From NCBI GenBank assembly GCA_002269645.1, contig NIVC01005050.1, positions 1 to 27,771 of the forward strand: a DNA stretch of 27,771 nucleotides. Reading direction: 5' to 3'. Of the stretch, positions 1 to 22,900 are shown piece by piece. Every line of letters begins with the position of its first letter. Position 1 is the stretch's first letter. The notes under the pieces are model-generated. The model saw nothing but the letters and a program-made list of their open reading frames with translations, did not search any database and was not told the DNA's origin. Made by a program: the position numbers and the translations under genes. Origin of the DNA: Macrostomum lignano. Taxonomy: Eukaryota.

Positions 1-2883
1 AGTGACTCTTTGGACTTCACACAGATCTTTGAGTTTTTCCACTCTTCTTCAGCCAGCTTGTAGATGCAGTCCGTAGCGTACAGATCCTCGCATTCAGCAA
101 ATTTCCACCAGTTCTAAAATAGTGTGCCGCTGAGTCTGCTGTGACTCGTCGCCGCAGCATGCGAGCGCTCTGCTGCTTTCATCGTCGGCAATGCTAAACT
201 TTGGTCCTCCGACGTCACCTCTATTGTAATTGAAATAAAAGCTGCCTCTCTTCACCGTTCGCATTCAAGTATAGTTCGTCAGAGTGTTTACAGCAATGCT
301 GATGACTTTGCTCTTGAGGCGCTTTAGCTGGTCATGGCTCTCATCAGTTTTGGCCTTTTTTTCTTTCAGCTGAATGATCAGCAGAATGCAGCTGGGAATC
401 AGCTCGAATTGCCTTGTCAGAATGAGGTCGGGAAGAAGATCGAGCTTGTCGCGTCTAAGCGCAAGGTCAACTATTCGCATCTCTTCTTCGTTTTCCTCAA
501 TGCATTTATCGCCAGGATGCTTCTTTACCCAATACCGAATGAACTTTGTTTTAGTATCTGAACTTACTGGGTCCAGCTTAAGTGCACTTCGAAGCGCCAT
601 TGTCGAGCCGTCCTTCCAGACAGCCTCGAATACGGAGACTTCAATCGAAGGCTTGCTTGCTACGTCAGTCGAAGGGTTGGCCTGGCCTGTCTGTGCTTTT
701 TTTTAAATTGTGACTGGCCTCGTTCTACGTCATCTATCACCGGTTGATCGACAATCTTACTAATGTGCTGCTGGCATGGCGGCGACTCGGTCAGGTAGTT
801 TCAAGGCTGCTTGAGCCGGATCCAGAAGGCGGAGAAATTTAATTGGCGGTTCCTGACCTTCCTGATTCTTCAACTTCGTTTCCACCACCTCCACCAGCCT
901 TTTAAGCTGGTCAGCGTTGCGAGCATAATCTACGCAAGTGTGCCCGTCGCCGTCTCTGGCGTAGATGCTGAGGCTCTTATTCTGTAAGTAAAAATGTTGG
1001 CCTGGTGACCTGCTCGGCAGGCGAAGTGCAGGCAGGTTGCACCCTTAAAGGGACCCTCTCGACTTTCTTGCTCCGCAGTTCGGCTTTCTTCACTCCAGCA
1101 ATCTTAGAAAGGGGTGTCATCAGTGCCCTCAGGTTGTACCTGCAAGCGAACTCGTGAACTACGTGAACGCCGTCCTTGCTGAGAAAAACTTCTTTCAGTT
1201 TTTCTTCCCAGTTATGTTTTTGCATCATTTAATATTTCAATAAGAATTTCTTCTTTTACCTGGGAGCAGTGAAGAAAGTTTTTTCCCATATTATTTTCCC
1301 GCTTAATGCTACCAGTCATTTTTTCAGCTAAGAAGTTTAGAGCTTGAAAAAAGTTGTCGGAGGAATGTTTCTCATCGGTTTCGGGATTCAAAAACAGGGC
1401 GTGCAAAAGACTGTTTCCATCGGTATCGGCTTCTGTGAAAGCATCAGGTTTCTCTAATTCAACATTAAAAAAGAAGAAATTCCAGCTCATGCAGGCGTAG
1501 AAAAGCATGTTTCTGCTTCTGCTGTCGCGCTCACCAAGGACTCTCCCCAAATCAAAGAGGGGAAGTTTCTCCTTCAGAATCTGAAATAGTTCATCTTTGC
1601 TACTGGCAGCAAGGAAAAAAACGGTTTTGCCATCGACATTGCTTTTGTCTTTAATTTGTTTGATGCATTCATCATTTTCACGAGCTTTAAGCATCAGCTC
1701 CAATATCTTGCCGAATGTTTGTACTTTTTTGTACATCGCGGCAAAGTGCAGGTAACTGTTCTTATACTTATCGGTGTGCGTAAAAAGCTGATCTATATTG
1801 TATTTCGCGAATTCCTCTACCATCTGTTCAGCCGTGCTGTCTGGGCTGTACTCGATGACTGCCTGCAGCACTGTCTGATTCATTGAGTTCCTCCAGTTAA
1901 GACATTCTTGGCCAAACAGCTGTTCCACTTCCAGGAACACTGCGCCCTTATCGCAGCTCGGATTCCGGTTCCTAGAGGCGCAGTGGGCCAGCGTGTTTCC
2001 GTCGGAGTCTTTCAGATTTTTCATTTTCTCGATGGCCCCCCCGTGCCTTCCATTTTCGTGCCCTTTTGTTTGCGCTCGCACTTGTTTCGTCTTCTTCATC
2101 TTGTTGATGGTCATTGCTCTCATCTCTCAGGCTCAGTGGAATGAAGTGATTTATCCCCTGGCTAAGGAGATACTTTACAGTTTCGGCACTGCAGTGCTCA
2201 ACTGCCTCATGAAGCACCGTGCTGCCTCTGTTGTTTTGCCATAGCAACCGATCGGACTTGTTGCCGTGGAGCACCGATTTGATGAATTTTTCATCGCTAG
2301 TATTTCTAGCAGCAAAGTGGGCCAGCGTGTCTCCCACTTTATTCCGATAATTTGAGCTCCGCAACTCCTGTTCCGCACCTAGAAACAGATCACTAAACTG
2401 CTGCAGTGAATAGTTCTGAGCAGCATAGTGAAGTGGAGCTACCGAGTTGCAGTCCTCATGCCTCAGACAGGAAGTACCCAATCTCTGTACTAATTTCTTG
2501 AGCAGTTCTGCTCCTTCAGGACTCATTCCGGCATAGTGAGCGGCAGTTCTCTGGTGCTTGTCTCGCTGCAGTTGAAGCTGTCGATCGGGCACGCCTCCAA
2601 CAAATTCAATCGCTTGTTTAAACTGTCCCTCAATTGCAAACGCCAGCAGATTTCCCATAAATTTGTGATCCAGAGGCTTCGTGTCCGGCAGCTTATCATC
2701 ATCCACATCGTCATCAGAGTCTGGATCATCCTCTTCTGTCATCATCAGTATGTCAGGCCACTCGGTCGGGTCAAATCCGTCAAACGTAGCGTGCCTGTCG
2801 GCTGAGACTGTTGGCTGGTCTGAGACTGATCTGCCTGAATCCTCACTGCCCTGCTCATGGGCAGCAGAGTGAGCAGTAGCCAT
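1..2883 (-). CDS. Ankyrin-repeat protein, probably the N-terminal part of a TRPA-like channel; apparently one long exon, frameshifted about 9 times, continuing beyond the left edge
   Basis: About 14 ankyrin-like motifs across ORFs 1972-2883, 1212-2123, 977-1228 and the frames between them (RTAAHYAG, APLHYAA, DTLAHFAA, STVLHEAV, NTLAHCAS, NSYLHFAA, NSLLHALF, GATCLHFAC, DGDGHTCVDYA). The rebuilt segment at 39-123, TILELVEFAECEDLYATDCIYKLAEEEW, has the spacing of the TRP pre-S1 motif (TxLxLA...W). The frames join by +/-1 nt at homopolymers. Confidence 0.75.
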
Positions 2884-3813: not shown

Positions 3814-4350
3814 GGGTCGCTTTCATAAGACCGAAATTTCACAACGCCGAAAACTCAAAATGCAAGGCCCTTAACAAGACCGAAACTTCATAAGACCGAA
3901 ATTTCACAACGCCTAAAACTACTGCACGATCTTTCACAAGACCGAAACTTCATAAGACCGAAATTTCACAACGCCTAAAACTACTGCACGATCCTTCACA
4001 AGACCGAAACTTCATAAGACCGAAATTTCACAACGCCTAAAACTACTGCACGATCCTTCACAAGACCGAAACTTCATAAAACCGAAATTTCACAACGCCT
4101 AAAACTACTGCACGATCCTTCACAAGACCGAAACTTCATAAGACCGAAATTTCACAACGCCGAAAACTCCTGCACGATCCTTCACAAGACCGAAACTTCA
4201 TAAGACCGAAATTTCACAACGCCGAAAACTCAAAATGCAGGGCCCTTCACAAGACCGAGGCGTTGTGAAATTTCGGTCTTATGAAGTTTCGATCTTGTGA
4301 AGGATGGTGTTTCGGCGTTGTGAAATTTCGGTCTTATGAACCCCCCCCCC
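3814..4350. mobile_element. Foldback-type non-autonomous DNA transposon with internal 62-bp tandem units
   Basis: Seven units of about 62 bp (ttcataagaccgaaatttcacaacgcc...) at 3822-4257, then inverted partial copies at 4258-4340. There is a 31-bp perfect subterminal inverted repeat and an 8-bp direct repeat ATTCTGAG at 3806-3813 and 4351-4358 (TSD). Confidence 0.8.
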
Positions 4351-4821: not shown

Positions 4822-6081
4822 ACAGCACATGTACCTCTGTAGTATAGCCATGGTGTAGAGTACATGTGCCAATGTAGTATAGCCATGGTGTAGTGTACAT
4901 GTACCTCTGTAGTATAGCCATGGTGTAGTGTACATGTGCCAACGTAGTGTAGCCATGGTGTAGAGTACATGTGCCATTGTAGTATAGCCATGGTGTAGTG
5001 TACATGTGCCAATGTTGTGTAGCCATGGTGTAGAGTACATGTGCCATTGTAGTGTAGCTATGGTGTAGTGTACATGTGCCAATGTAGTGTAGCTATGGTG
5101 TAGTGTACATGTGCCAATGTAGTGTAGCCATTGTGTAGTGTACATGTGCCAATGTAGTGTAGCCATTGTGTAGTGTACATGTGCCAATGTAGTGTAGCCA
5201 TTGTGTAGTGTACATGTGCCATTGTAGTGTAGCTATGGTGTAGTGTACATGTGCCAATGTAGTGTAGCCATGGTGTAGTGTACATGTGCCATTGTAGTGT
5301 AGCCATTGTGTAGTGTACATGTGCCATTGTAGTGTAGCTATGGTGTAGTGTACATGTGCCATTGTAGTGTAGCCATTGTGTAGTGTACATGTGCCATTGT
5401 AGTGTAGCTATGGTGTAGTGTACATGTGCCATTGTAGTGTAGCCATTGTGTAGTGTACATGTGCCATTGTAGTGTAGCTATGGTGTAGTGTACATGTGCC
5501 ATTGTAGTGTAGCCATTGTGTAGTGTACATGTGCCATTGTAGTGTAGCTATGGTGTAGTGTACATGTGCCATTGTAGTGTAGCTATGGTGTAGTGTACAT
5601 GTGCCAATGTAGTGTAGCCATGGTGTAGTGTACATGTGCCATATATTGTAGTGTAGCCATTGTGTAGTGTACATGTGCCATTGTAGTGTAGCTATGGTGT
5701 AGTGTACATGTGCCATTGTAGTGTAGCCATTGTGTAGTGTACATGTGCCATATATTGTAGTGTAGCCATGGTGTAGTGTACATGTGCCATATATTGTAGT
5801 GTAGCCATGGTGTAGTGTACATGTGCCATATATTGTAGTGTAGCCATGGTGTAGTGTACATGTGCCATTGTAGTGTAGCCATTGTGTAGTGTACATGTGC
5901 CATTGTAGTGTAGCTATGGTGTAGTGTACATGTGCCAATGTAGTGTAGCCATGGTGTAGTGTACATGTGCCATATATTGTAGTGTAGCCATGGTGTAGTG
6001 TACATGTGCCATATATTGTAGTGTAGCCATGGTGTAGTGTACATGTGCCATATATTGTAGTGTAGCCATGGTGTAGTGTAC
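4822..6081. repeat. 35-bp minisatellite (gtagtgtacatgtgccattgtagtgtagccatggt), about 35 copies, with 39-bp variants
   Basis: Tandem units are directly visible. Minus-strand ORFs repeat with 35-aa (3 units) and 13-aa (39-bp unit) periods. Confidence 0.97.
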
Positions 6082-6651
6082 AGGTTAATTAGGGTAAAAA
6101 GGGTTTGACTCAAGGGGCTAAGGTTTAGGGTATATGGTTTAGTCATGGCTCAAGGAGTTGTTGAAAAGCCAGCTCATCTTTCAGAAAAATAGCTAACGAT
6201 GCAGACTTGCAGAAAGCAATGATGGATAAAGAAAATGTTCCTATAGCTTAGAGAGTAAAACTGCAACGCTTACCTTTGATCGAAATTGCTCCCGTAGTTC
6301 CAGAAAGCGAAACTGGAGACTCATTTTTAGGAGCATAATTATAAAGAGTGCTAGATCTTTTTGCAATATAATTTTCAACCAATAAAATCTGTGCCTGCAC
6401 AATATCTAAGAGAATAGGGTAGAGTGATGCATTTTTGCATCGAGTTTAACAGAATAACTGAGAAGAAGCTGCATAAAATAGAATGGAGAGGACCGTGACC
6501 CCTGTTAAACAGTTTCAGTAAGTACTGTAAGTAGTGTGGGTTGGCAGGCCCTGACGAACACTGGAGATAGGAGGGCAGAAAGTGACAGAGGGCCAGTGGA
6601 GGTGAGATGGTGGGACGGCAATGGTGAGGCAACAACAATCTATCTTGTTGT

Positions 6652-7147
<496 letters not shown>

Positions 7148-7445
7148 CGAGAAAGAGCGAGCGAAGCGAGCTCTTTCGAGCTTGCTTGCCGCAGCCAATC
7201 AAGCTGAATGCACGCACACAAGATCACCGGAAACGATTAAGGCAGCTGGAAAGCCAATGGGCGCGGTAAGCGCTTTTATCCAGAGGAACTACCTGCTGGA
7301 ACCAGCCTGCCGTTCGAAAATCAGACTACTCAAGTAGTGCAAAAGAGTGCGAGCAACTACCGAGAAATCTAATTTTCGTAACCGCTCCGGTGCAGGTCCT
7401 GGCAATAGATGGTAGATAGCGAGAAAGAGCGAGCGAAGCTGTCTA

Positions 7446-7754
<309 letters not shown>

Positions 7755-8141: not shown

Positions 8142-11100
8142 ATGGCCAACGAGAAACGCGTCAGCTCCTTGATAGCTTTGGAGGAGTTGCAGAAATCTAG
8201 CGACATGCAGGAAATGACTCAACGAATGGAGGCCCAGAAAAACATGGAGATCGTGCGGTCCAAGGCTACGGATGTGCTAAGTCTGGTGGCTCTGTCACCA
8301 GAGTTCAATCAGTTGTTCTTAGTGCAATCCGTTGAGGACATGAGCGCCTTTGTGTTCAGTTATAAGAGCGATAGAACTATCATTATTGACATGCTGGCAA
8401 GGTGAGTTTATCGTACAGGTATTAAAATCCGTTTAACCGTTAGATTGTTTCACGAGTTAGACAACCCAGATGACCTGTTAGACACACCAGTTCACTCGTT
8501 AGACACACAAGTTCACCTGTTAGACACACCATTTCACCTGTTAGACACACCAGTTCACTCGTTAGACACACAAGTTCACCTGTTAGACACACCAGTTCAC
8601 TCGTTAGACACACAAGTTCACCTGTTAGACACACCATTTCACCTGTTACACACACAAGTTCACCTGTTAGACACACACAAGTTCACCTGTTAGACACACA
8701 AGTTCACCTGTTATGCACACACAAGTTCACCTGTTAAACACACCATTTCACCTGTTACACACACCATTTCACCTGTTAGACATACCATTTCACATGTTAC
8801 ACACAATTTCACCTGTTAGACACACCATTTCACCTGTTACACACACAATTTCACCTGTTAGACACACCATTTCAGCTGTTAGACACACACAAGTTCACCT
8901 GTTAGACACACCATTTCACCTGTTACACACACTATTTCACCTGTTACACACACCAGTTCACCTGTTAGGCACACCATTTCACCTGTTACACACACTAGTT
9001 CACCTGTTTGACACACCAGTTCACCTGTTAGACACACCAGCTCACCCGTTACACACATAATTTCGACACCTGTTAGACACATAACTTTATCCGTTAGACA
9101 GACCTGTTCACGAGTAGATCAAGTTCACCAGTTCCAAATCCCCCAATCCCCACCCGCAGATGCCCTCGCGAACAGATCGCCAATTTCGAGACCTACAAAT
9201 TCGCTTCCCACCCGGAGTTCGAGAAGAAGATCAGTCAGTACACGCGAACCGCTGAGAAGCCGAACAACCAGTTAGCTAAATGCCGGCCCTGGGACGTTGC
9301 CCTCTGTGTGATACTGAAGATCGAAGCCCTCGACAGTGAGGCAATGCAGCAGCCCCACATGAGGCTGCTATTCCGAGAGAATCTCATCATTAAGCACCTG
9401 TGGGACAATTTCATGCGAGAAACAATGGAACTAGACGAGATGACAGGAATTCCTATTGTGTTTAAATACGACGAAGTGTCAAATCCGACTTTTAACTACG
9501 ATCTGGCCGAGTACAAAGTCTACGATGTCTATGGCAATTTAGTGCCGTGGAAATCCGAGAGCCGGAGCACTCTGTCCTACCTGTGCATGGAGCAGTTGGG
9601 CCCAAATCTGCAGTACCTCACGGAAGTCATGGTGTCCGGGAAACGACGCGGATATGTGTTCGATGTGGACACCGCTTTGAAGATTTTTGATCAGCTGCTG
9701 TGCCGCTGTTTGCAGGTTAAATACGAACTGCAACTTACTGATGACTATCCTCATCCTGTCACATCCTTATCCTGTCACATCCTTATCCTGTCACATCCTC
9801 ATCCTGTCACATCCTCATCCTGTCACATCCTTATCCTGTCACATCCTTATCCTGTCACATCCTCATCCTGTCACAGCCTTATCCTGTCACATCCTCATCC
9901 TGTCACAGCCTTATCCTGTCACATCCTCATCCTGTCACATCCTCATCCTGTCACATCCTCATCCTGTCACATCCTCATCCTGTCACATCCTCATCTTGTC
10001 ACATCCTTATCCTGTCACATCCTTATCCTGTCACATCCTTATCCTGTCACATCCTTATCCTGTCACAACCTCAGCTTGTCACATCCTTATCCTGTCACAT
10101 CCTTATCCTGTCACATCCTTATCCTGTCACATCCTCATCCTGTCATAGCCGTATCCTGTCACATCCTTATCCTGTCACATCCTTATCCTGTCACAACCTT
10201 ATCCTGTCACATCCTTTTTCTGTCACATCCTTATCCTGTCACATCCTGACCCTGCCAAATCCTTATCCTCTCTCACATTTTTATTCCGTCCCATTCTTAT
10301 CCTCTCACATCTTTATCCTGTCACATCCTAATTCTGTCACATTCTTATTCTGTCACATCTTTATCTTGTCACATCCTTATTCTGTCACATCCATATTCTG
10401 TTACATTCTTATCCTGTCACATCTTGATCCTGTCACATCTTTATTCTGTCACATCCTAATCCTGTCACATCCTTATCCTTTCACATCCTGAACCTGTCAA
10501 ATCCTTATCCTCTCACATTTTTATTCCATCCCATCCTTATTCTGTCACATCCTAATCTTGTCACATCCTAATCCTGTCACATCCAAATCCTGTCACATCC
10601 TAATCCGATCACATCCTTATCCTGTCCCATTTTTCCTTCGCATACTTACCTTTCACAACCCAACCAAGATGTAAATAATCAAAATTGTTGTTACGTCCCC
10701 AAATACCGCCTCAGATTCACAGATTCGGCGTAACTCACAACGCCATTGAGCCGCACAATCTCTACTTCGGTCGCAGCATCGCTTTCAATGTTCTCTACAT
10801 TGCGAATTTCAACGTGGCCACGCTGTTCGATCCCAAAGATCCCAATAATATGCGCAAGAGCGGCTCGGATAGCGAGCTGTACGGTCACCTGAGATTTGCA
10901 TCGCACATCAGGATGAAGGGAGGTCAGGCTCACCCGGTGCATGACCTTGAGTCCGCTTTCTACACCTTAGTGGCCCTGCTAACCAACAACTTGCCTTGGG
11001 ACTCATGTCTAAGCACTGGCGGCTCTAGTAGCAAGGTTGGTTTTAGCGTGGGTTAGTTGTTGTTATCTTGTTTGTTTGCTGGTTTGCTGGTTGTGTTGTT

Positions 11101-12236
11101 TGCCAGTTTGGTTGTTTGTTTGTTACAAAGCAATCACACAACCAATCAAACTGTCCCTCAGACGGGCGCCGCAGGCCGCGGCTCAGTCGTTGACAACATC
11201 AACCTGTCCAACACGGTCAGCAACCAGTCGGACATCACTAAATCGATCGAACGAAACAGCATGATGCAGAAATTGCGCGAATTTAAAACCAATTTTTGGA
11301 AGTCTAATAACGGCATTGCACGCGTGCTGGCCGACTTGCAATACATGGCTTTTGGAGTTGACAGGTGGGGTTGCATTTTTCTCATAGTTTTGTTTATTTA
11401 TCGCGTAGCATCTTATTACATGACCACCAGGTCATTGCATTCTTTAAGCATCAGATCATGACATTCCTTAAGCATCAGATCATGACATTCCTTAAGCATC
11501 AGATCATGACATTCCTTAAGCATCAGATCATGACATTCCTTAAGCATCAGATTATGGCATTCCTTAAGAATCAGATCATGACATTCCTTAAGAATCAGAT
11601 CATGACATTCCTTAAGCATCAGATCATGACATTCCTTAAGCATCAGATAATGAAATTCCTTAAGCGTCAGATCATGACATTCCTTAAGCATCAGATCATG
11701 ACATTCCTTAAGCGTTAGATCATGACATTCCTTAAGCATCAGATCATGACATTCTTTGAGCATCAGATCATGACATTCCTTAAGCATCAGGTCATAACAG
11801 TTCGTAATTCGTCGCTTAATAAAGTTAAACCCAATTCGTACTCAGGCATCGCGTCTCACTAACCGTGGAGATCATCAAAGATTTGTACGCGAAAATTCGC
11901 GACCTGATAAACACTGTGGGCAGCGACTCGCCGCAGGCAAGTTTCTTCAGCAACTTGCTTCTGCAGCACACCACCGAGTACCAGACCTACACTGACCTCA
12001 GACGAACCGTGCTCATGATGTACCGCTTCGAGTCAATCAGCGCTTTCATCAATACGCCAACTTATCAAAAGAAAATCGAATCACTCGCGCACGACGAAGT
12101 TGACGTCAACGTTCGCCTAGCTTGGAATCTCACCAACTGGTGCTTCAACGGCGTGGAAGTCAACGTTCTGGCTAACAACACCACCAGCGTTGTGAAGAGT
12201 ACAGCTAAAAATGTGGTTGCTAGAACGGTTGAATAA
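8142..12236 (+). CDS. Casein kinase 1-family pseudokinase, 576 aa; exons 8142-8401, 9160-9715, 10715-11035, 11162-11364, 11846-12236
   Basis: All four introns are GT..AG with matching phases (2,0,0,2) and the exons total 1731 nt (577 codons). CK1-like motifs appear in order: VILKIE, GIPIV, LCMEQLGPNL, TALKIFDQLL, GHLRFAS, HDLESAFYTLVALLTNNLPW. The catalytic motifs are altered (HNAIEPHN, IANFNVA). Confidence 0.88.
8455..9110. repeat. 21-bp minisatellite (acacaccagttcacctgttag) in pseudokinase intron 1
   Basis: Tandem units; the ORFs show a 7-aa period (LLDTPVH). Confidence 0.95.
9747..10630. repeat. 16-bp minisatellite (atcctgtcacatcctt) in pseudokinase intron 2
   Basis: Tandem units that degenerate toward the 3' end; the ORFs show a 16-aa period. 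Confidence 0.95.
11445..11795. repeat. 24-bp minisatellite (catcagatcatgacattccttaag) in pseudokinase intron 4
   Basis: About 14 tandem units; the ORF shows an 8-aa period (FLKHQIMT). Confidence 0.96.
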
Positions 12237-13415: not shown

Positions 13416-16118
<2,703 letters not shown>

Positions 16119-17189: not shown

Positions 17190-17401
17190 CCTACACGTGC
17201 AGAGTCTAATAGTACATATAGCAGCAACATGAGCGGCGGTCCCAATCAGTGAACATTAAGATTCACTCCCACAGCCACGGTGCCTGTGGCGGCGGCCTAC
17301 ACGTGCAGAGTCTAATAGTACATATAGCAGCAGCATGAGCGGCGGTCCCAATCAGTGAACATTAAGATTCACTCCCACAGCCACGGTGCCTGTGGCGGCG
17401 G
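17190..17401. repeat. 106-bp tandem duplication covering the 3' end of the DUF1330-like gene
   Basis: 17190-17295 and 17296-17401 are identical except for one base. Confidence 0.95.
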
Positions 17402-17987
17402 TCAGCGCGAAATGATGCACCCGGACTCCGTTAGCCTGGCGATATCTCCGCCAAGCCTCAACGTCTGGCCACTGGTTGATGACCAGGTACTTCGGGCTCC
17501 AGCTGCTGCGCAGCCTGTACTGCAGATAGTCCGGACAGGCCACCACATTCCATCGGCCGTCGCTTGGATCGTTCAACTCGGCCAAGTACTCGTTCTCAAA
17601 CGCCGTCTGATCTCGGAAGTCGGACCAATCGTTGATCTCCACAACGGACATTGCTTTGTCGAAGGCGCCTCTAGCCGGGACCAGGAGAATCGCGGCCGAC
17701 CAGAGCCAGTCCTGCTGTCGCACCTCATTAGTGCACTCATACCAATATTTAGCCGCTTCGAAGCTGGGAAAGTACAACAAACCGTAGCCGTATTGTCGAC
17801 GATCCTCGCCTTCGATTAGCTGCACGTCTGGCAGGAAGGCGCAGTCCTGACCGTTGTGACTCCGCTGAATAATCGAAGCAATACGCTTGATGCTGTTGTG
17901 ATAGTTGTAGGCGATGTCTTTGCCGAAGCGGATCACGGCGTAGTAGCCGACATTCTCGGGCTCCTTGAGTCCGTGATAAGATGCCAT
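17352..17987 (-). CDS. Intronless tandem DUF1330-like (dimeric alpha/beta barrel) protein, about 211 aa
   Basis: The first ATG is at 17987 (the track start at 18020 is TTG). VQLIEGE..YGYGLLYFPSFEAAKYWYE matches the DUF1330 pattern leG.w....vi.Fps.eaA.aWy, and a second copy reads WSPKYLVINQWPDVEAWRRY. Confidence 0.75.
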   Translation of the reverse strand: MASYHGLKEPENVGYYAVIRFGKDIAYNYHNSIKRIASIIQRSHNGQDCAFLPDVQLIEGEDRRQYGYGLLYFPSFEAAKYWYECTNEVRQQDWLWSAAILLVPARGAFDKAMSVVEINDWSDFRDQTAFENEYLAELNDPSDGRWNVVACPDYLQYRLRSSWSPKYLVINQWPDVEAWRRYRQANGVRVHHFALTAATGTVAVGVNLNVH

Positions 17988-19930
17988 GCGATTATGCTCG
18001 GGTGTAGAATTTGCTGCCAACGAATTTCAAACTGCCTGCCCCAATGCAGCTGCTCTTTTCCTTGCGATCTCGCATTTTATTCTCAGCTATGCTCTATCTG
18101 CGGAATGTTTTCCTTTCTCATTCTCATTACTCCGTTGCCTAGGGACTAAGGCACGTACGCGGCATTGTACTTGAAGCCACAAGGAATACTAAAATTGAAT
18201 AACGAATCTAGACTCGTCTTTGCAAGAGGCTAGAAAAAAAGCGTTTCAATCCAAGAATGTAGAAACTATATTTAGGCTATAGGACGTCGGTAGGGCGTCG
18301 ATAGAACTAATCATACGACTCGATATGGCCGACTCTGAAGGCGGAACAATTTACAATTTATCGCAAAACGGAAGCTAAAAGAATGTTAAAAAATGGATGA
18401 GAGAACAAGCATTAACTCGTTTTTTACTTTAATTTAATTGCCAATGCATTTCGACCCTTGTAGGTCATCGTCAGGGCAGTAGTGAAATTGAAAATTCTAA
18501 TAAACAGTTGAATAAATATACCTGTGAGAAGTTGAATACACAATATAAATTATTGTACGTAGTTTTCAATCGAAACAAGTTAACACACGGTGCAGTAGCG
18601 TGTGTTAACTTGAATGTTAACCAGAATGTTAAAAAAATTCATCAAATAAGCTGTACAACTTTCTGTGAATTTCAACTGTTCTCAGTTGCCGTCCAATCCA
18701 GACGTCTTTAACTTAAGTCGTCCATGGCCTAGGCAATTCTAAAATAAACTCTCTATAAGCTGAATTGCTTTGCCCATTATATAAAAAAGATGAGGTGCAT
18801 CAGATCAAGTAGAAGAGGTTCTTCAAAGCACAGACTTGCTTCAATTCAGTCTCTATATTTGAATAGAATGTTATGGAGCAGTGTGTCGAGAGTAGCTCTG
18901 AATGAGTTTCTTAGCGACCTGTCCAGTGCCCCCGATGCAGTTCAGACGGAAGACAACTGTGCATTCTTGCGGAAGTCAGCCAAAAAATTAATAAAGATGA
19001 TCAGTGCTAATAATTGGCTATTAGGTATAGGAAGTTTGTATTTACATTGTTTCACACGATCTTGTACTAATCATCTACCAGGTCAACTCTACTCTACCTT
19101 ATGTACCCACTAAAATATAACAAATATTTAATTATTCGCTGAAGGGCTAGTGAGCACCCAGATGATATCGTCCCGCATTTCTAGAGCCAAGCCTGAATGC
19201 GCACTCATACACACAGCTCACGCAGGGTGTACAGCGGCTCTGACTTTCTAATCGTCAGGCATGTACACTCTCCGAGCCTTGGGAGGCAGGCACTCATGAC
19301 TTTTTGTGCACACAAGCGCCAAATGAATGCTGGCCGCTAATGAAATCGAATCAGAGGAGTCGTTTCTCGAGAGTCAGACAATTTCTACTTCAGCAGTCTC
19401 CTACTACAGTATTCAAACTGGTATATGCTCTCAACTCAACTGTTGGTCATTTGGGTTTCCAATTGAGTACTGAATGCGTTAATTAATTCAGCCAGCACAC
19501 TATATACCATCAACCAAATGCGTTTATAATTATGAAGTGGCTACCCGTAGTTCTTTTGAGCATCCAAAAACTTCTCCTTGCAGCTTATGGTCTTTAACTC
19601 ATTGCTGGCAGCACAATAGCGGTATGGGCACAACCATGCTCTACCCATTTAGCTTAATTTCGAGCATCGCTAACTAATGTACAGTGTAGTCGGTTTACTA
19701 TTCTCCGTTCTGAGTCTTCTCATTCTTCTGCCTTATATTTGACTAGAAATAAGTTTGGCTAGGCGTTCCAAGCGACCCTACTAATCAACCGCAGAAGTTT
19801 TAAGCTTAGTGTATTTTATTAGAGTAAACTCAAACAACTTTAATTCACTTGAAATCAAACTAGCGCTGTTCAGTATAGAGAGAATAGATAGAAAAAAAGG
19901 GTCTATTAAGTAGGAAAACACACTGGGCAA

Positions 19931-22900
19931 ATGTCTTCAGATAGTGAGTCATTCACGTCGCATTCTGGCAGCCTTGTTGAGCAGCAGTTGAACTCGGCGC
20001 TTGAAACTGCAGCAGTCAGCTCGCAACCCAGAGTCACTGGTGCTGCTGCAGCGCCGTCTCCCAGCGGCTCTGTTGGGTGAGAGTTCTAGCATTGACATTT
20101 TTGAGCAGCCTAGTCCCATCATCAGGCATGTATACAGACACTTACAAAAAACGTGCAATTTAGTTTTAATTTAACCCACTACTAGCAAACATTATTTTGT
20201 TTGAATAAAGTCCAAATAAAAACAATTTATAGGTTTATGATTTGAAGTTTCGGTATACCTAACGTATCCGGCTCAAAGATAGCTGGTTTTATGGGGATAG
20301 CGGGATTACCTGTTAATAATGCCGAACCTACTCTAGTAGATATTATAGAAAACATATTATTGCATCGCTTGCAGAAATCATCGAATTGTCGAAAACTCCT
20401 CCGAGTCGTCATTTTCTGACGAGGTAGGCGACGGCGAAGGCGGCGGTGTCGAACTAGCAGATCAACTAAACCATAGTTCAGAATCCGGAATGCAACAGCA
20501 GCAACAAGTCGCTCCAGATGATTTCCACGGTAGTGCCGGTAAGAAGAATTTGGTTTAGTTTGTTCTTGTAGACTTAGAACTATCTTAGGGCTTTTACGTT
20601 TACGAAGTAGACTGGTAGTTAAGGATCGAACTGCATGTAACTCGTAGCTTGACTCAGTTCGAGTTATAGGTTTATAATTATTAGACTAACTAAATTTGAC
20701 TGGAGTGATAACTTCACCACTTACAAGCAGCCCGTTGCAGCCAGCTTAAAGTAGCTGGCATTCTCAGGGACCTTGATAGTTCTGTGGCTCTATCAAGAAT
20801 TATATTGCGGTTTCGTAGCTGGCGCCCCGTCTGTAGCTGGCGCCTCCCCTCTGTAGCTGGCGCCTCTCCTCTGCAGCTGGCGCCCCTGCAAAATAATTGT
20901 GTTTCTGCCAGATTAAACTGCCCAAAAGAACAACATGTACTTTTTGTTCATGTGAAAAGCAATCTCACATTTTCAGTTCCTCGCGAGAACGGTCAACTCG
21001 AAGACGACTGGTCAGTCAGTCAGGTTCCTCCTGTGCAGCGGACCTCCAGTCACATGGAATTCAGCGGTCGCGACCTCGAGCTCCGTTCGTTGTCGCGTCA
21101 GCTGTGCAAAAAGTCTGCTCGGCGCGGTTTCGACTTCAAGCTGATGCTAGTCGGCGAGAGCGGCATCGGCAAGACCACCCTGATCGACTCTTTGTTCAAC
21201 GTTGAGAGTACACGAAATCTTGGCAGCCAATACGTCAGAGGCCAGCGCGATGCCACCAGTACAACTAGACTGTGCGAACGGTTCTTCGAGCTGGAAGAAG
21301 GCGGAGTTACGGTTCGGCTGACTGTGATTGACACGCCCGGATTCGCCACCGAGCTGGATAGCAACGGCTGCGTGCAGCCAGTGCTCAGCTACGTGGAACG
21401 CCAGCTGGACGACTTTTACCGAATGGAACAGGGAACTGACAGGTCCAAACTGCAGGACGGACGTGTCCACGCCCTGCTGTATTTGATTAATCCGTCTAGT
21501 CGCGGTTTGAAGCAGTTAGACCTGATGTGCTTGAAAGCGTTGCACAGCAAGGTTAATATTGTTCCGGTCATTGGCAAAGCCGACACTCTGACGACAAGCG
21601 AGAAGGCGAACCTGAAAGCCTGGATTCTGCAGGATCTCAGCCGGCACGGCATCTCGGTGTACACTCTCCCAGAATTTGACGAATGCTTCGGCAACCAAGC
21701 CGATCAACACGGCGACGATGTCTACCTGAGGAATCAGTACGATAGCCTCAGAAGCTGCATGCCGTTGGCTGTTGTTGGCGCCAATCAGCTGGTGAAAAAT
21801 GCCAACGGTCAATGGGCCAGGGTGCGAGAATATCCCTGGGGAGTGGTCGATATTGACAATCCGGAGTTCTCCGATTTTTTGAAACTGCGCGAACTTCTCA
21901 TGTGAGTATATTTGGAGGTTAAGCCGTGGACTCTCCAAAATAGTGCAGTGCGTCAAGTAATTGGGATGATAGAAAGTTTTAGGTCCTTTAAAAATAACTA
22001 TTTTCAGTAGTTCTGAAGTATTGTGAATATCTAAATGACTGAACCTGAAAAAACAAACACCAAGTATACTTGAACATCCATTCAACAGAATGTACATGGA
22101 AGACTTTAAAGACAAGACGCACGAGGTGATCTATGAACAGATTCGGCTCAACAGACTGAGGCAGAGCGACTGGCAAATGTCGAGGTGAGTGCATGGCACC
22201 AACATAAGCAACGCTTGTTACGTAAGTCTTATACAAACCCGTACAATAATACGACGCGTCTAGCTACGTACATGAAATGACGTCGCCATGACAAGTGGGT
22301 AGGCCGACGGATCAAGACATTATGCCGAACATCCGTCCAAGGACTACTGAAGTAGAAGGACGGGGAAACAATATTTCTTGGAAAATCTTTAGGAGGCAGG
22401 TTTTACAACAAGTCGGTATTTGATCATTGCCTGAATCTTATGTAGTCCAGTAATAACATTTGTTTAAGGCCTACAAGAAGCGCAGAGTCCTGCTGGTTTT
22501 TAGTTTGTCAGTAACTTGTAAGGCAGGAGTCGGCAATCTTTTTTTACCCCCAAGGGCCAGATAGGGGAACCTAGAGCATGACTGCGGGCAAGAGGAGGGG
22601 AAAGAGGAAATGGAATAAAGAGGAGAGAAGAGAGATAGGAGAAAAGAGAAGCGAGGAAAATGAGAAGATACGAGAGGAGAGAACAGAGGAGAAGAGAGAA
22701 GAGGGGAGAGGAGAGAAGAGTAGAGATGAGAAGGGATATGAGAAAAGAGAGGAGAGGAGAGAGAAGGAAGAGGAGAGGCGAGAGGAGAAGACAGAGGACA
22801 GATTAGAGAAAATAGAAGAGGTGGTTAAAGAGAGGAGAGCTGAGAAGAGACTCAAACCTTGAGCAGGTCGGATTGGTATTGTGAAGTTTCAAAGGACTCG

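What the first reader, a model, noticed from the sequence alone, without database searches (positions are those of the whole stretch)
8142..12236. Unusual CK1-family pseudokinase with all catalytic motifs replaced and unrecognised flanking domains
The rebuilt protein keeps the CK1 scaffold and the beta3 Lys (VILKIE). HRDxKPxN becomes HNAIEPHN (10736-10759), losing the catalytic Asp and reversing Lys to Glu. DFG becomes NFN (10805-10813), and no GxGxxG loop precedes beta3. It also has inserts of about 10 and about 30 aa around GIPIV, plus N-terminal (about 120 aa) and C-terminal (about 190 aa) regions I do not recognise. Frame and splice phases are intact over five exons, so it looks like a maintained gene rather than a decaying copy. 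Loss of these motifs predicting catalytic inactivity is established kinase knowledge; a scaffold or allosteric role is inference.
Basis: partly seen in the sequence, partly recalled or inferred. Interest (0 to 1): 0.7.

Follow-up and report, generated by a model that had tools for sequence, protein, structure and literature searches.

The report
Flatworm CK1-derived pseudokinase gene family
This is a real, transcribed and selectively maintained gene of the flatworm Macrostomum lignano that encodes a casein-kinase-1-like protein without its catalytic residues; it belongs to an undescribed family of such pseudokinases seen only in this species, which is a modest find.

Summary
Five GT..AG exons (8142-8401, 9160-9715, 10715-11035, 11162-11364, 11846-12236) give an intact 576-aa protein. 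It is identical to GenBank PAA46105.1 (BOX15_Mlig022212g5, Macrostomum lignano), a model derived from transcripts.

The protein is a CK1-type kinase fold:
- Family profile against CK1 delta, E = 2e-27.
- hhalign against CK1 representatives, E = 4.6e-36.
- AlphaFold pTM 0.84, and the top 50 listed Foldseek hits are all CK1-group kinases.

HRDxKxxN is HNAIEPHN, DFG is NFN, and the Gly-rich loop is a glycine-free turn. The beta3 Lys, alphaC Glu, and the catalytic-loop His and Asn are kept. This is the same keep/lose pattern as in the known CK1-group pseudokinase VRK3.

The gene is under purifying selection. Against a 1.4%-diverged copy there are 18 synonymous and 6 non-synonymous changes (dN/dS 0.09, P = 4e-8).

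The "unrecognised" termini are not shown to be separate domains. The N-terminal part is a long helix, a degenerate beta1-beta2 hairpin and a conserved beta2-beta3 insert. The C-terminal part is a helical region that probably continues the C-lobe.

The gene belongs to a monophyletic clade of at least 8 M. lignano pseudokinase paralogue groups. Their sister paralogues keep GxGxxG, HxD and DFG. No relative of this architecture was found outside M. lignano.

Function is inferred to be non-catalytic binding or regulation. Interest is modest.

The parts
8142..8401 (+). Exon 1 (aa 1-86 plus 2 nt). Encodes the long N-terminal helix (about aa 11-49) and the degenerate beta1-turn-beta2 hairpin (aa 69-85, nt 8346-8396). 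The turn is S76-D77-R78 and stands where GxGxxG would be.
   Evidence: ATG at 8142 and a GT donor at 8402. Secondary structure of the AlphaFold model. Aligned with the GSGAYG and GAGAFG loops of paralogues P0009 and P0011.
8402..9159 (+). Intron 1 (758 nt), almost entirely a 21-bp minisatellite (8449-9111, about 31 copies).
   Evidence: A related array of about 23 bp, with a different copy number, sits in the same intron of copy g6.
9160..9715 (+). Exon 2 (aa 87-272). Contains the conserved beta2-beta3 insert (HPEFEKKISQYTRTAEKPN), beta3 VILKIE (K140 at 9317-9319), alphaC (R159-E160, with E160 at 9377-9379), an 11-aa insert (9404-9442), GIPIV (from 9446), a 29-aa hairpin insert (9473-9559), the CK1 hallmark LGPNL, and alphaD-alphaE.
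9716..10714 (+). Intron 2 (999 nt), filled by a 16-bp minisatellite (9747-10630, about 55 copies).
   Evidence: Copy g6 has 28 copies.
10715..11035 (+). Exon 3 (aa 273-379). Contains the degenerate catalytic loop HNAIEPHN (10736-10759), NFN in place of DFG (10805-10813), the activation segment with RFAS (CK1 has RYAS), alphaF HDLESAFY, and LPWD (10991-11002).
11036..11161 (+). Intron 3 (126 nt, no tandem repeat).
   Evidence: One difference in 126 nt against copy g6.
11162..11364 (+). Exon 4 (aa 380-446 plus 2 nt). Encodes a low-complexity loop predicted to be disordered (aa about 376-401), then helices with the conserved K421..F424-W425.
11365..11845 (+). Intron 4 (481 nt), with a 24-bp minisatellite (11438-11799, about 15 copies).
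   Evidence: Copy g6 has 144 copies, in an intron of 3574 nt.
11846..12236 (+). Exon 5 (aa 447-576 plus the TAA stop). Encodes C-terminal helices with the family-invariant R499 (12000-12002), the conserved motif WNLTNWCFN (12123-12149), and a tail predicted to be disordered (aa 546-576).

Best explanation
The locus is a transcribed, selectively maintained gene of Macrostomum lignano (BOX15_Mlig022212g5). It encodes a casein-kinase-1-derived pseudokinase.

What is kept. The protein keeps the bilobal CK1 fold and the residues that hold that fold in an active-like shape. These are the beta3 Lys140 - alphaC Glu160 pair, catalytic-loop His280 and Asn287, the Phe of the DFG position, and the alphaF HDLES motif.

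What is lost. The groups needed for phosphotransfer are gone. The catalytic Asp is Ala282, the catalytic-loop Lys is Glu284, the Mg-binding DFG Asp is Asn303, and the Gly-rich loop is a glycine-free turn.

Inferred mechanism. It most likely acts without catalysis, as a binding module. It could dock CK1-type partners or substrates, or pair with the active-looking sister paralogues (PAA70460.1 and PAA64235.1 types). In that way it would scaffold, sequester or allosterically tune signalling, as other pseudokinases do next to their active relatives. Candidate interaction surfaces are the family-specific additions: the N-terminal helix, the beta2-beta3 insert with HPxFE..YTR..KPN, the beta4-beta5 hairpin, and the extra C-lobe helices ending in WNLxNWCFN.

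Shown: gene structure, CK1 homology and fold, loss of the motifs, purifying selection, family structure.
Inferred: inactivity, and the binding or regulatory mode of action.
For: Gene model.
- The model is intact and identical to a transcript-derived public annotation (annotation method from PMC5730564).

CK1 homology and fold.
- Sequence: E = 1e-8 for the single protein, 2e-27 for the family profile, and 4.6e-36 by hhalign.
- Structure: the AlphaFold model built on 81 sequences has pLDDT 78 and pTM 0.84. The top 50 listed Foldseek PDB hits are all CK1, TTBK or VRK kinases, each with probability 1.0.

Motifs.
- The motif losses are read directly from the sequence and are conserved in paralogues at 34-48% identity. 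H280, N281, P285, N287, N303, K140 and E160 are invariant.

Selection.
- Against copy g6 there are 18 synonymous and 6 non-synonymous differences, giving dN/dS 0.089 and binomial P = 3.6e-8.
- All 6 replacements fall in aa 14-153 and none in aa 154-576.
- The two loci of paralogue P0002 differ by about 1.2% in their flanks but by only 1 synonymous site in the 1647-nt CDS.

Family structure.
- The pseudokinase clade is monophyletic in 100 of 100 bootstraps. It is sister to paralogues that keep GxGxxG, HHDLKPDN or HLDLKPDN, and DFG or DYG (94 of 100), and these pass Pfam Pkinase.

Precedent.
- The pattern "structural residues kept, catalytic ones lost" is documented for the CK1-group pseudokinase VRK3 (PMC2639636).
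Against: - No biochemical data exist, so inactivity is predicted from motifs only. Some kinases with aberrant motifs are active (CASK, WNK, Titin; listed in PMC2639636).
- No partner, expression site or phenotype is known. I found no expression data for this gene.
- The transcript support cannot be assigned to this copy as opposed to its three near-identical copies.
- The invariance of N281 and N303 within the sub-clade might reflect a retained ligand-binding function and not only architecture.
- AlphaFold used CK1 sequences in the alignment, so the kinase-like packing of the divergent termini is partly model-driven. I could not inspect the coordinates.
Confidence: 0.6

Rival explanations
1. 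It is a nucleotide-binding but non-catalytic pseudokinase. ATP or ADP binding, perhaps without metal, would act as a conformational switch or stabiliser that controls partner binding, as in STRAD-alpha or the JAK JH2 domains.
For: - The Lys140-Glu160 pair, Asn287 and a hydrophobic residue (Ile138) at the adenine-pocket position of VAIK are kept. PMC2639636 states that V/I/L/M are acceptable at that position, and that some pseudokinases with degraded G-loops still bind ATP.
- Asp to Asn at the DFG position is isosteric, and it is invariant in the sub-clade.
Against: - The Gly-rich loop is replaced by a tight Ser-Asp-Arg turn that contains an acidic residue. This is the kind of change PMC2639636 associates with loss of ATP binding.
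- Glu284 replaces the gamma-phosphate-contacting Lys and would repel phosphate.
- In two paralogue groups (P0155, P0008) the beta3 Lys is itself lost. Nucleotide binding is therefore not a family-wide requirement.
Confidence: 0.2
2. It is an enzyme with non-canonical chemistry. The altered but conserved pocket (H280, N281, E284, H286, N287, N303) would catalyse phosphotransfer by another route, or a different reaction, as kinase-fold enzymes such as SelO or SidJ do.
For: - Several pseudo-active-site residues are invariant among sub-clade paralogues at 34% identity.
- Kinase-fold proteins with other chemistries exist (my own knowledge; a SidJ preprint is listed).
Against: - The catalytic-loop residues vary across the wider pseudokinase clade: HNA, HNG, HND, HCD and LGN at the HRD position, and NFN, NFG, NFR, NYK, SFD, ELG and YDC at the DFG position. 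That pattern looks like progressive decay and not a new conserved catalytic constellation.
- The retained residues are the ones known to be architectural in VRK3.
Confidence: 0.07
3. It is a decaying duplicate or an annotation or assembly artefact with no function.
For: - The genome is highly redundant and repeat-rich (PMC5730564).
- One near-identical copy (g3) carries a 1-bp deletion in exon 5.
- Pfam does not recognise the domain.
Against: - The reading frame is intact across five exons in three of the four copies.
- dN/dS is 0.09 with P = 4e-8.
- Motifs are conserved through paralogues at 34% identity, including in the termini.
- The gene model is transcript-based.
Confidence: 0.03

Closest known systems
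Casein kinase 1 family (CK1 delta/epsilon/alpha; CK1 group of eukaryotic protein kinases)
   Same: - It is the best sequence and profile match: 99 bits and E = 2e-27 to CK1 delta/epsilon.
- It has the same predicted fold.
- CK1 hallmarks are kept. LGPNL corresponds to LGPSL. D..TALKIFDQLLCR..IH corresponds to KTVL.LADQ...R.E..H. RFAS corresponds to RYAS of the S-I-N segment. HDLES corresponds to DDLES, and LPWD to LPWQ.
   Different: - There is no Gly-rich loop. HRD is HNA, the catalytic-loop Lys is Glu, and DFG is NFN.
- There are large insertions: about 50 aa between beta2 and beta3, 11 aa and 29 aa around beta4, and about 40 aa of disordered loop after LPW.
- It has an N-terminal helix of about 50 aa and extra C-terminal helices.
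- It scores below Pfam Pkinase reporting.
VRK3, the vertebrate CK1-group pseudokinase (PMC2639636)
   Same: It shows the same logic of degradation. The G-loop is degraded and gains an acidic residue. The beta3 Lys - alphaC Glu pair and the catalytic-loop His and Asn are retained. The catalytic Asp, the catalytic-loop Lys and the DFG Asp are lost. The fold is conserved.
   Different: It is not an orthologue. VRK chains score only about 36 bits, against 99 bits for CK1 delta. The loss is independent and lies in a flatworm lineage. The insertions differ, and the protein belongs to a multi-paralogue expansion, whereas VRK3 is a single gene.
Lineage-specific kinase/pseudokinase expansions (the nematode CK1-group expansion, from my own knowledge; coccidian ROPK kinases and pseudokinases such as ROP5, PMC3682881, listed)
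   Same: It is a taxon-restricted radiation in which catalytically degraded paralogues coexist with active-looking ones from the same clade.
   Different: The lineage and parent family differ from ROPK. There is no signal peptide or secretion signature that I could see, and no functional data. Its relationship to the nematode CK1 expansions was not tested. The nearest hits outside M. lignano were generic CK1-like proteins.

Membership tests
Eukaryotic protein kinase fold, CK1 group / CK1 family | Significant sequence similarity of the catalytic domain to CK1, better than to other kinase groups | tested here: met
   - phmmer against PDB: CK1 alpha and delta, E about 1e-8.
- Family profile: CK1 delta/epsilon 2e-27, CK1 gamma about 1e-19, TTBK about 1e-17, VRK about 1e-8, other kinases about 1e-7.
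- hhalign against CK1 representatives: E = 4.6e-36.
Eukaryotic protein kinase fold, CK1 group / CK1 family | Bilobal kinase fold | tested here: met
   The AlphaFold model has pLDDT 78.4 and pTM 0.84. The top 50 listed Foldseek PDB hits are CK1, TTBK or VRK kinases, with probability 1.0 and TM-score normalised to the target of 0.53-0.63. Caveat: the alignment used for the prediction contained CK1 sequences.
Eukaryotic protein kinase fold, CK1 group / CK1 family | CK1 signature motifs (LGPSL, S-I-N in place of APE, DDLES, LPW) | tested here: met
   LGPNL, RFASHI (Ser kept, Asn not), HDLES and LPWD were read from the alignments.
Eukaryotic protein kinase fold, CK1 group / CK1 family | Scores above the Pfam PF00069 (Pkinase) gathering threshold | tested here: not met
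   There is no Pkinase hit at E <= 10 for the window protein. Paralogues P0002, P0003 and P0008 give none, and P0004 and P0005 give 16-17 bits against a cut-off of 31.7. The active-looking P0009 and P0011 pass with 56 and 51 bits.
Catalytically competent protein kinase | Gly-rich loop GxGxxG between beta1 and beta2 | tested here: not met
   The beta1-beta2 turn is S76-D77-R78 with no glycine. It aligns with GSGAYG and GAGAFG of P0009 and P0011.
Catalytically competent protein kinase | beta3 Lys and alphaC Glu ion pair | tested here: met
   K140 (VILKIE) and E160 (FRENL) are invariant in the sub-clade.
Catalytically competent protein kinase | Catalytic loop HRDxKxxN with the Asp base and the Lys | tested here: not met
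   The loop reads HNAIEPHN. Asp is Ala282 and Lys is Glu284. His280 and Asn287 are kept.
Catalytically competent protein kinase | DFG Asp (metal binding) | tested here: not met
   The motif reads NFN. Asn303 is invariant in the sub-clade, and no member of the pseudokinase clade has Asp at this position.
Catalytically competent protein kinase | Measured phosphotransfer activity | not testable with these tools
   This needs recombinant protein and a kinase assay.
Pseudokinase (kinase fold lacking at least one of the VAIK Lys, HRD Asp or DFG Asp) | Kinase fold plus loss of key catalytic residues, with evidence that the gene is maintained | tested here: met
   Fold. Two of the three key residues are lost. 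dN/dS is 0.089 with P = 3.6e-8.
VRK3 orthologue | Closest relatives are VRK kinases | tested here: not met
   VRK1 and VRK2 chains score 34-36 bits, against 99 bits for CK1 delta.
Non-functional (decaying) pseudogene | Disrupted frame or neutral evolution (dN/dS about 1) | tested here: not met
   The ORF is intact. There are 18 synonymous and 6 non-synonymous differences, whereas neutrality predicts about 5 and 19.

The most novel reading that the evidence does not exclude
The Macrostomum clade may be a self-contained kinase/pseudokinase regulatory system. In this reading, the pseudokinase paralogues use their conserved lineage-specific additions (the HPxFE..YTR..KPN insert and the WNLxNWCFN C-terminal motif), and possibly a retained nucleotide pocket, to pair with and control the active sister kinases. 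Alternatively, the invariant His/Asn/Glu/Asn pocket of this sub-clade may carry a non-canonical ligand-binding or catalytic function. Either would be a new, independently evolved CK1-based signalling module specific to flatworms.
Probability: 0.12. Interest if true: 0.65.

Novelty: new member of a known kind. Interest (0 to 1): 0.3.

Why it matters
Pseudokinases are a recognised class, and the CK1 group already has a structurally characterised one (VRK3), so the principle is not new.

What is new is modest but concrete. This is an undescribed clade, seen only in M. lignano, of at least 8 CK1-derived pseudokinase paralogue groups with a distinctive architecture. Pfam's kinase model misses it. 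It sits next to active-looking sister paralogues in a flatworm that is tractable by transgenesis and RNAi.

That gives a natural series (active, partly degraded, strongly degraded) for studying how a kinase fold is repurposed after catalytic loss. It also flags a set of proteins, named only "hypothetical protein" or "Protein kinase domain-containing protein" in public records, for correct annotation. It does not open a long-standing question.

Tried and rejected
- Pfam scan of the full protein found no kinase hit, only a chance sub-threshold match to a phage HU-inhibitor model.
- A first AlphaFold run on a 5-sequence alignment was unusable, with pLDDT 40. A second run on 81 sequences worked.
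- A second word-indexed homologue search, using the family alignment, returned the same four proteins and added nothing.
- The C-terminal region (LPW to the end) searched alone as a 10-sequence profile found nothing significant in PDB (best E = 0.2, a designed or Rop helical bundle) or in Pfam.
  - Its equivalence to CK1 alphaG-alphaI therefore rests on the whole-chain model and on weak alignments.
  - MAFFT and the hhalign alternative pair R499 with the CK1 "Y..LR" Arg and W545 with the CK1 terminal "DW". The top hhalign path instead pairs "FRFE" with "FDW". I could not resolve this without the model coordinates.
- MAFFT placed the Gly-loop equivalent differently in two alignments. I followed the AlphaFold hairpin at aa 69-85 and the by-eye register with P0009, P0011 and P0005.
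- I looked for the site of expression or a phenotype. The gene ID appears in no held full text and in no supplement of four M. lignano papers.
- Literature searches for a described flatworm CK1 pseudokinase family found none. The large pseudokinase catalogue of Kwon et al. 2019 (my own knowledge) is not in the library, so I could not check whether it lists these UniProt entries.
- A decaying pseudogene was rejected on dN/dS and paralogue conservation.
- VRK3 orthology was rejected on score ranking.
- The bacterial genome, metagenome and phage/plasmid collections were not searched, because they are irrelevant to a metazoan gene.
Full report
**1. What is in the sequence**

The window is eukaryotic DNA rich in minisatellites. 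On the + strand, five exons join through GT..AG introns of 758, 999, 126 and 481 nt. The exons are 8142-8401, 9160-9715, 10715-11035, 11162-11364 and 11846-12236. Together they give an uninterrupted 1731-nt reading frame of 576 aa.

- HNAIEPHN is at 10736-10759.
- NFN is at 10805-10813.
- VILKIE has its Lys140 codon at 9317-9319.

**2. Identity of the locus**

The 576-aa translation is, residue for residue, GenBank PAA46105.1. That record is "hypothetical protein BOX15_Mlig022212g5", Macrostomum lignano, UniProt A0A1I8GDS4 "Protein kinase domain-containing protein". The window is that protein's entire 27,771-bp contig in assembly GCA_002269645.1.

The GenBank annotation of this assembly was built only from RNA-seq and de novo transcripts (StringTie, TACO, TBONE and TransDecoder; PMC5730564). 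The four junctions and expression are therefore supported indirectly. Reads cannot be assigned to this particular copy.

There are four copies:
- g1 differs from the window CDS by 1 nt.
- g3 has exons 1-4 identical and a 1-bp deletion in an A-run of exon 5, giving a 537-aa product.
- g5 is the window copy.
- g6 differs from the window CDS by 24 nt.

**3. Is it a CK1-type kinase domain?**

Yes.
- Pfam's Pkinase model does not report it even at E <= 10.
- phmmer against PDB sequences finds CK1 alpha and delta at E about 1e-8 over residues 189-370. In that alignment HRDIKPDN lies over HNAIEPHN and DFG over NFN.
- A profile of ten family members ranks CK1 delta/epsilon (2e-27, 99 bits) above CK1 alpha, HRR25, CK1 gamma (about 1e-19), TTBK1/2 (about 1e-17) and VRK1/2 (about 1e-8).
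- hhalign of the pseudokinase clade against 68 CK1-like representatives gives probability 99.9% and E = 4.6e-36.
- An AlphaFold model from an 81-sequence alignment has mean pLDDT 78.4 and pTM 0.84. The top 50 listed Foldseek PDB matches are all CK1, TTBK or VRK kinases, with probability 1.0 and TM-score normalised to the target of 0.53-0.63.
- CK1 hallmarks can be read directly: LGPNL, RFAS, HDLES and LPWD.

**4. State of the catalytic machinery**

Lost:
- The Gly-rich loop. The beta1-beta2 hairpin at aa 69-85 has the turn Ser76-Asp77-Arg78.
- The catalytic Asp, now Ala282.
- The catalytic-loop Lys, now Glu284.
- The DFG Asp, now Asn303.

Kept:
- Lys140 and Glu160.
- His280 and Asn287.
- The DFG-position Phe304.
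- A hydrophobic Ile138 at the adenine-pocket position.

This is the split described for the CK1-group pseudokinase VRK3 between "structural residues retained" and "functional residues lost". VRK3 has the G-loop TRDNQG, FSLK, HGN and GFG, and its K-E pair and its His and Asn are retained for architecture (PMC2639636). Predicted inactivity follows from established kinase knowledge. It has not been measured.

**5. The "unrecognised" termini**

Paralogues P0009 and P0011 keep GSGAYG and GAGAFG. These loops align to the hairpin region of the window protein. The paralogues also possess the about 40-50-aa beta2-beta3 insertion; in P0009 it carries the HPGF.E.I signature.

The N-terminal 135 aa therefore break down as follows:
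- a long helix (about 11-49) and a short helix (53-59);
- the degenerate beta1-beta2 hairpin (69-85);
- a conserved family-specific insert (86-135, HPEFEKKISQYTRTAEKPN) that precedes beta3.

After LPWD (365-368) the model shows:
- a loop predicted to be disordered (about 376-401);
- six helices (401-530);
- the conserved WNLTNWCFN motif (540-548);
- a disordered tail (546-576).

The whole chain is modelled as one globule with pTM 0.84. Arg499 is invariant in all ten family members. Together with Trp545 it can be aligned with the CK1 alphaI "Y..LR" and the terminal "DW".

Searched on its own, however, the C-terminal region matches nothing significant in PDB or Pfam, and the alternative alignments disagree. 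So it is probably the remainder of the C-lobe with extra lineage-specific helices. That is inference from a model whose coordinates I could not inspect.

**6. Is it maintained?**

Yes.
- Window (g5) against g6: 18 synonymous and 6 non-synonymous differences over 374 synonymous and 1354 non-synonymous sites. This gives dS 0.050, dN 0.0044 and dN/dS 0.089. The binomial P for so many synonymous changes is 3.6e-8.
- All six replacements lie in aa 14-153. Residues 154-576 carry 11 synonymous changes and no replacement.
- The intronless paralogue P0002 is encoded at two loci. Their 7.4-kb alignment differs at 68 positions, but the 1647-nt CDS differs at one synonymous site.
- At greater depth, paralogues of 34-48% identity keep K140, E160, H280, N281, P285, N287 and N303, together with the N- and C-terminal motifs.

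**7. Family and distribution**

An exhaustive HMM search of 1.84 billion representative proteins found only nine proteins below E = 1e-30. The nine, and two further relatives (P0010, P0011), are all from M. lignano.

They comprise:
- The window's group plus seven further pseudokinase groups. Their catalytic loops read HNA, HNG, HND, HCD or LGN. At the DFG position they read NFG, NFR, NYK, SFD, ELG or YDC.
- Three more distant groups that keep GxGxxG, HHDLKPDN or HLDLKPDN, and DFG or DYG. Two of these (P0009, P0011) were scanned against Pfam and pass the Pkinase threshold.

Beyond these, the hits are generic CK1-like proteins covering only the C-lobe.

A neighbour-joining analysis on 293 well-occupied columns recovers the pseudokinase clade in 100 of 100 bootstraps. 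The whole family, including the active-looking groups, is recovered in 94 of 100, against 68 CK1-like outgroups. Long-branch effects cannot be excluded.

The simplest history is a Macrostomum-lineage CK1 offshoot that first acquired the inserts. One branch then lost the G-loop and the DFG Asp once, radiated, and degraded further.

A curated kinome of the parasitic flatworm Fasciola hepatica lists only 8 CK1-group kinases and nothing of this kind (PMC12837073). Other Macrostomum species are apparently not represented in the protein collections searched, so the age of the family is unknown.

**8. Mechanism**

My best-supported reading is a catalytically dead CK1 fold that works by binding. It would act as a scaffold, a decoy or an allosteric partner, possibly of the active sister kinases. 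It would use the conserved C-lobe and the conserved family-specific additions.

Rivals, in decreasing order of likelihood:
- a nucleotide-binding switch (K140, E160, I138 and N287 are kept);
- a non-canonical enzyme;
- a non-functional relic, which is effectively excluded.

I found no data on expression site or phenotype.

**9. Verdict**

Three corrections apply: not all motifs are replaced, the flanks are not shown to be separate domains, and the gene is one of a family. The protein is an already-annotated but uncharacterised one. It adds a new, taxon-restricted family to a well-known category (pseudokinases; CK1 group, VRK3-like degradation). Interest is modest at 0.3.

Noticed in passing
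window 8449-9111, 9747-10630, 11438-11799 (introns 1, 2, 4); L001 3308-4130, 4774-5225, 6033-9487: Three of the four introns consist almost wholly of minisatellites with units of 21, 16 and 24 bp. The same 16- and 24-bp units, and a related unit of about 23 bp, occupy the same introns of the homeologous copy g6. Copy numbers differ greatly: 55 against 28 for the 16-bp unit, and 15 against 144 for the 24-bp unit. The splice sites and the repeat-free intron 3 are conserved.
   Followed up: partly
window 3822-4258, 4827-6082, 6652-7754, 13645-14057, 14367-14844: Further large tandem arrays lie outside the gene: 62 bp x 7, 35 bp x 35, TAGA x 273, 21 bp x 20 and TAAC x 120. This fits the reported 15% simple and tandem repeat content of the M. 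lignano genome.
   Followed up: no
L002 and L003, 3001-4647: The closest paralogue group (P0002, 48% identity) is encoded by a single uninterrupted 1647-nt ORF, whereas the window gene has four introns. The paralogue may be a retrocopy that stayed functional. Its two loci differ by about 1.2% in the flanks but by one synonymous site in the CDS.
   Followed up: partly
L005, about 5204-5593 (copy g3, PAA47603.1): Copy g3 is identical to the window in exons 1-4. It has a 1-bp deletion in an A-run of exon 5 (near codon 522), which removes the conserved WNLxNWCFN end and gives a 537-aa product. This could be a real inactivating frameshift in one copy or a long-read homopolymer error.
   Followed up: partly
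window 11036-11161 against L001 5631-5756: The repeat-free intron 3 shows 1 difference in 126 nt between g5 and g6, although synonymous divergence of the CDS is about 5%. The sample is too small to interpret. Possible causes are chance, constraint on the intron, or local gene conversion.
   Followed up: no
window 1212-2883 (-), 17352-18020 (-), 20784-21905 (+): These are the neighbouring coding regions. Of the two overlapping 303-aa ORFs on the minus strand, the one scanned (1212-2123) has ankyrin repeats (Ank_2, E = 3e-9). A 222-aa ORF has only a weak, sub-threshold DUF1330 match. There is also a clear septin exon (Pfam Septin, E = 3e-77).
   Followed up: partly
P0012 (ENA metagenome protein, 662 aa) and P0013 (Orchesella cincta ODM93064.1, 667 aa): The best non-Macrostomum hits are proteins with two tandem CK1-like domains. 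In P0012 both domains read HRNIKPGN or HRNIEPGN, so the catalytic Asp is replaced by Asn, while DFG/DFA is kept. This looks like another, unrelated case of CK1 degeneration.
   Followed up: no
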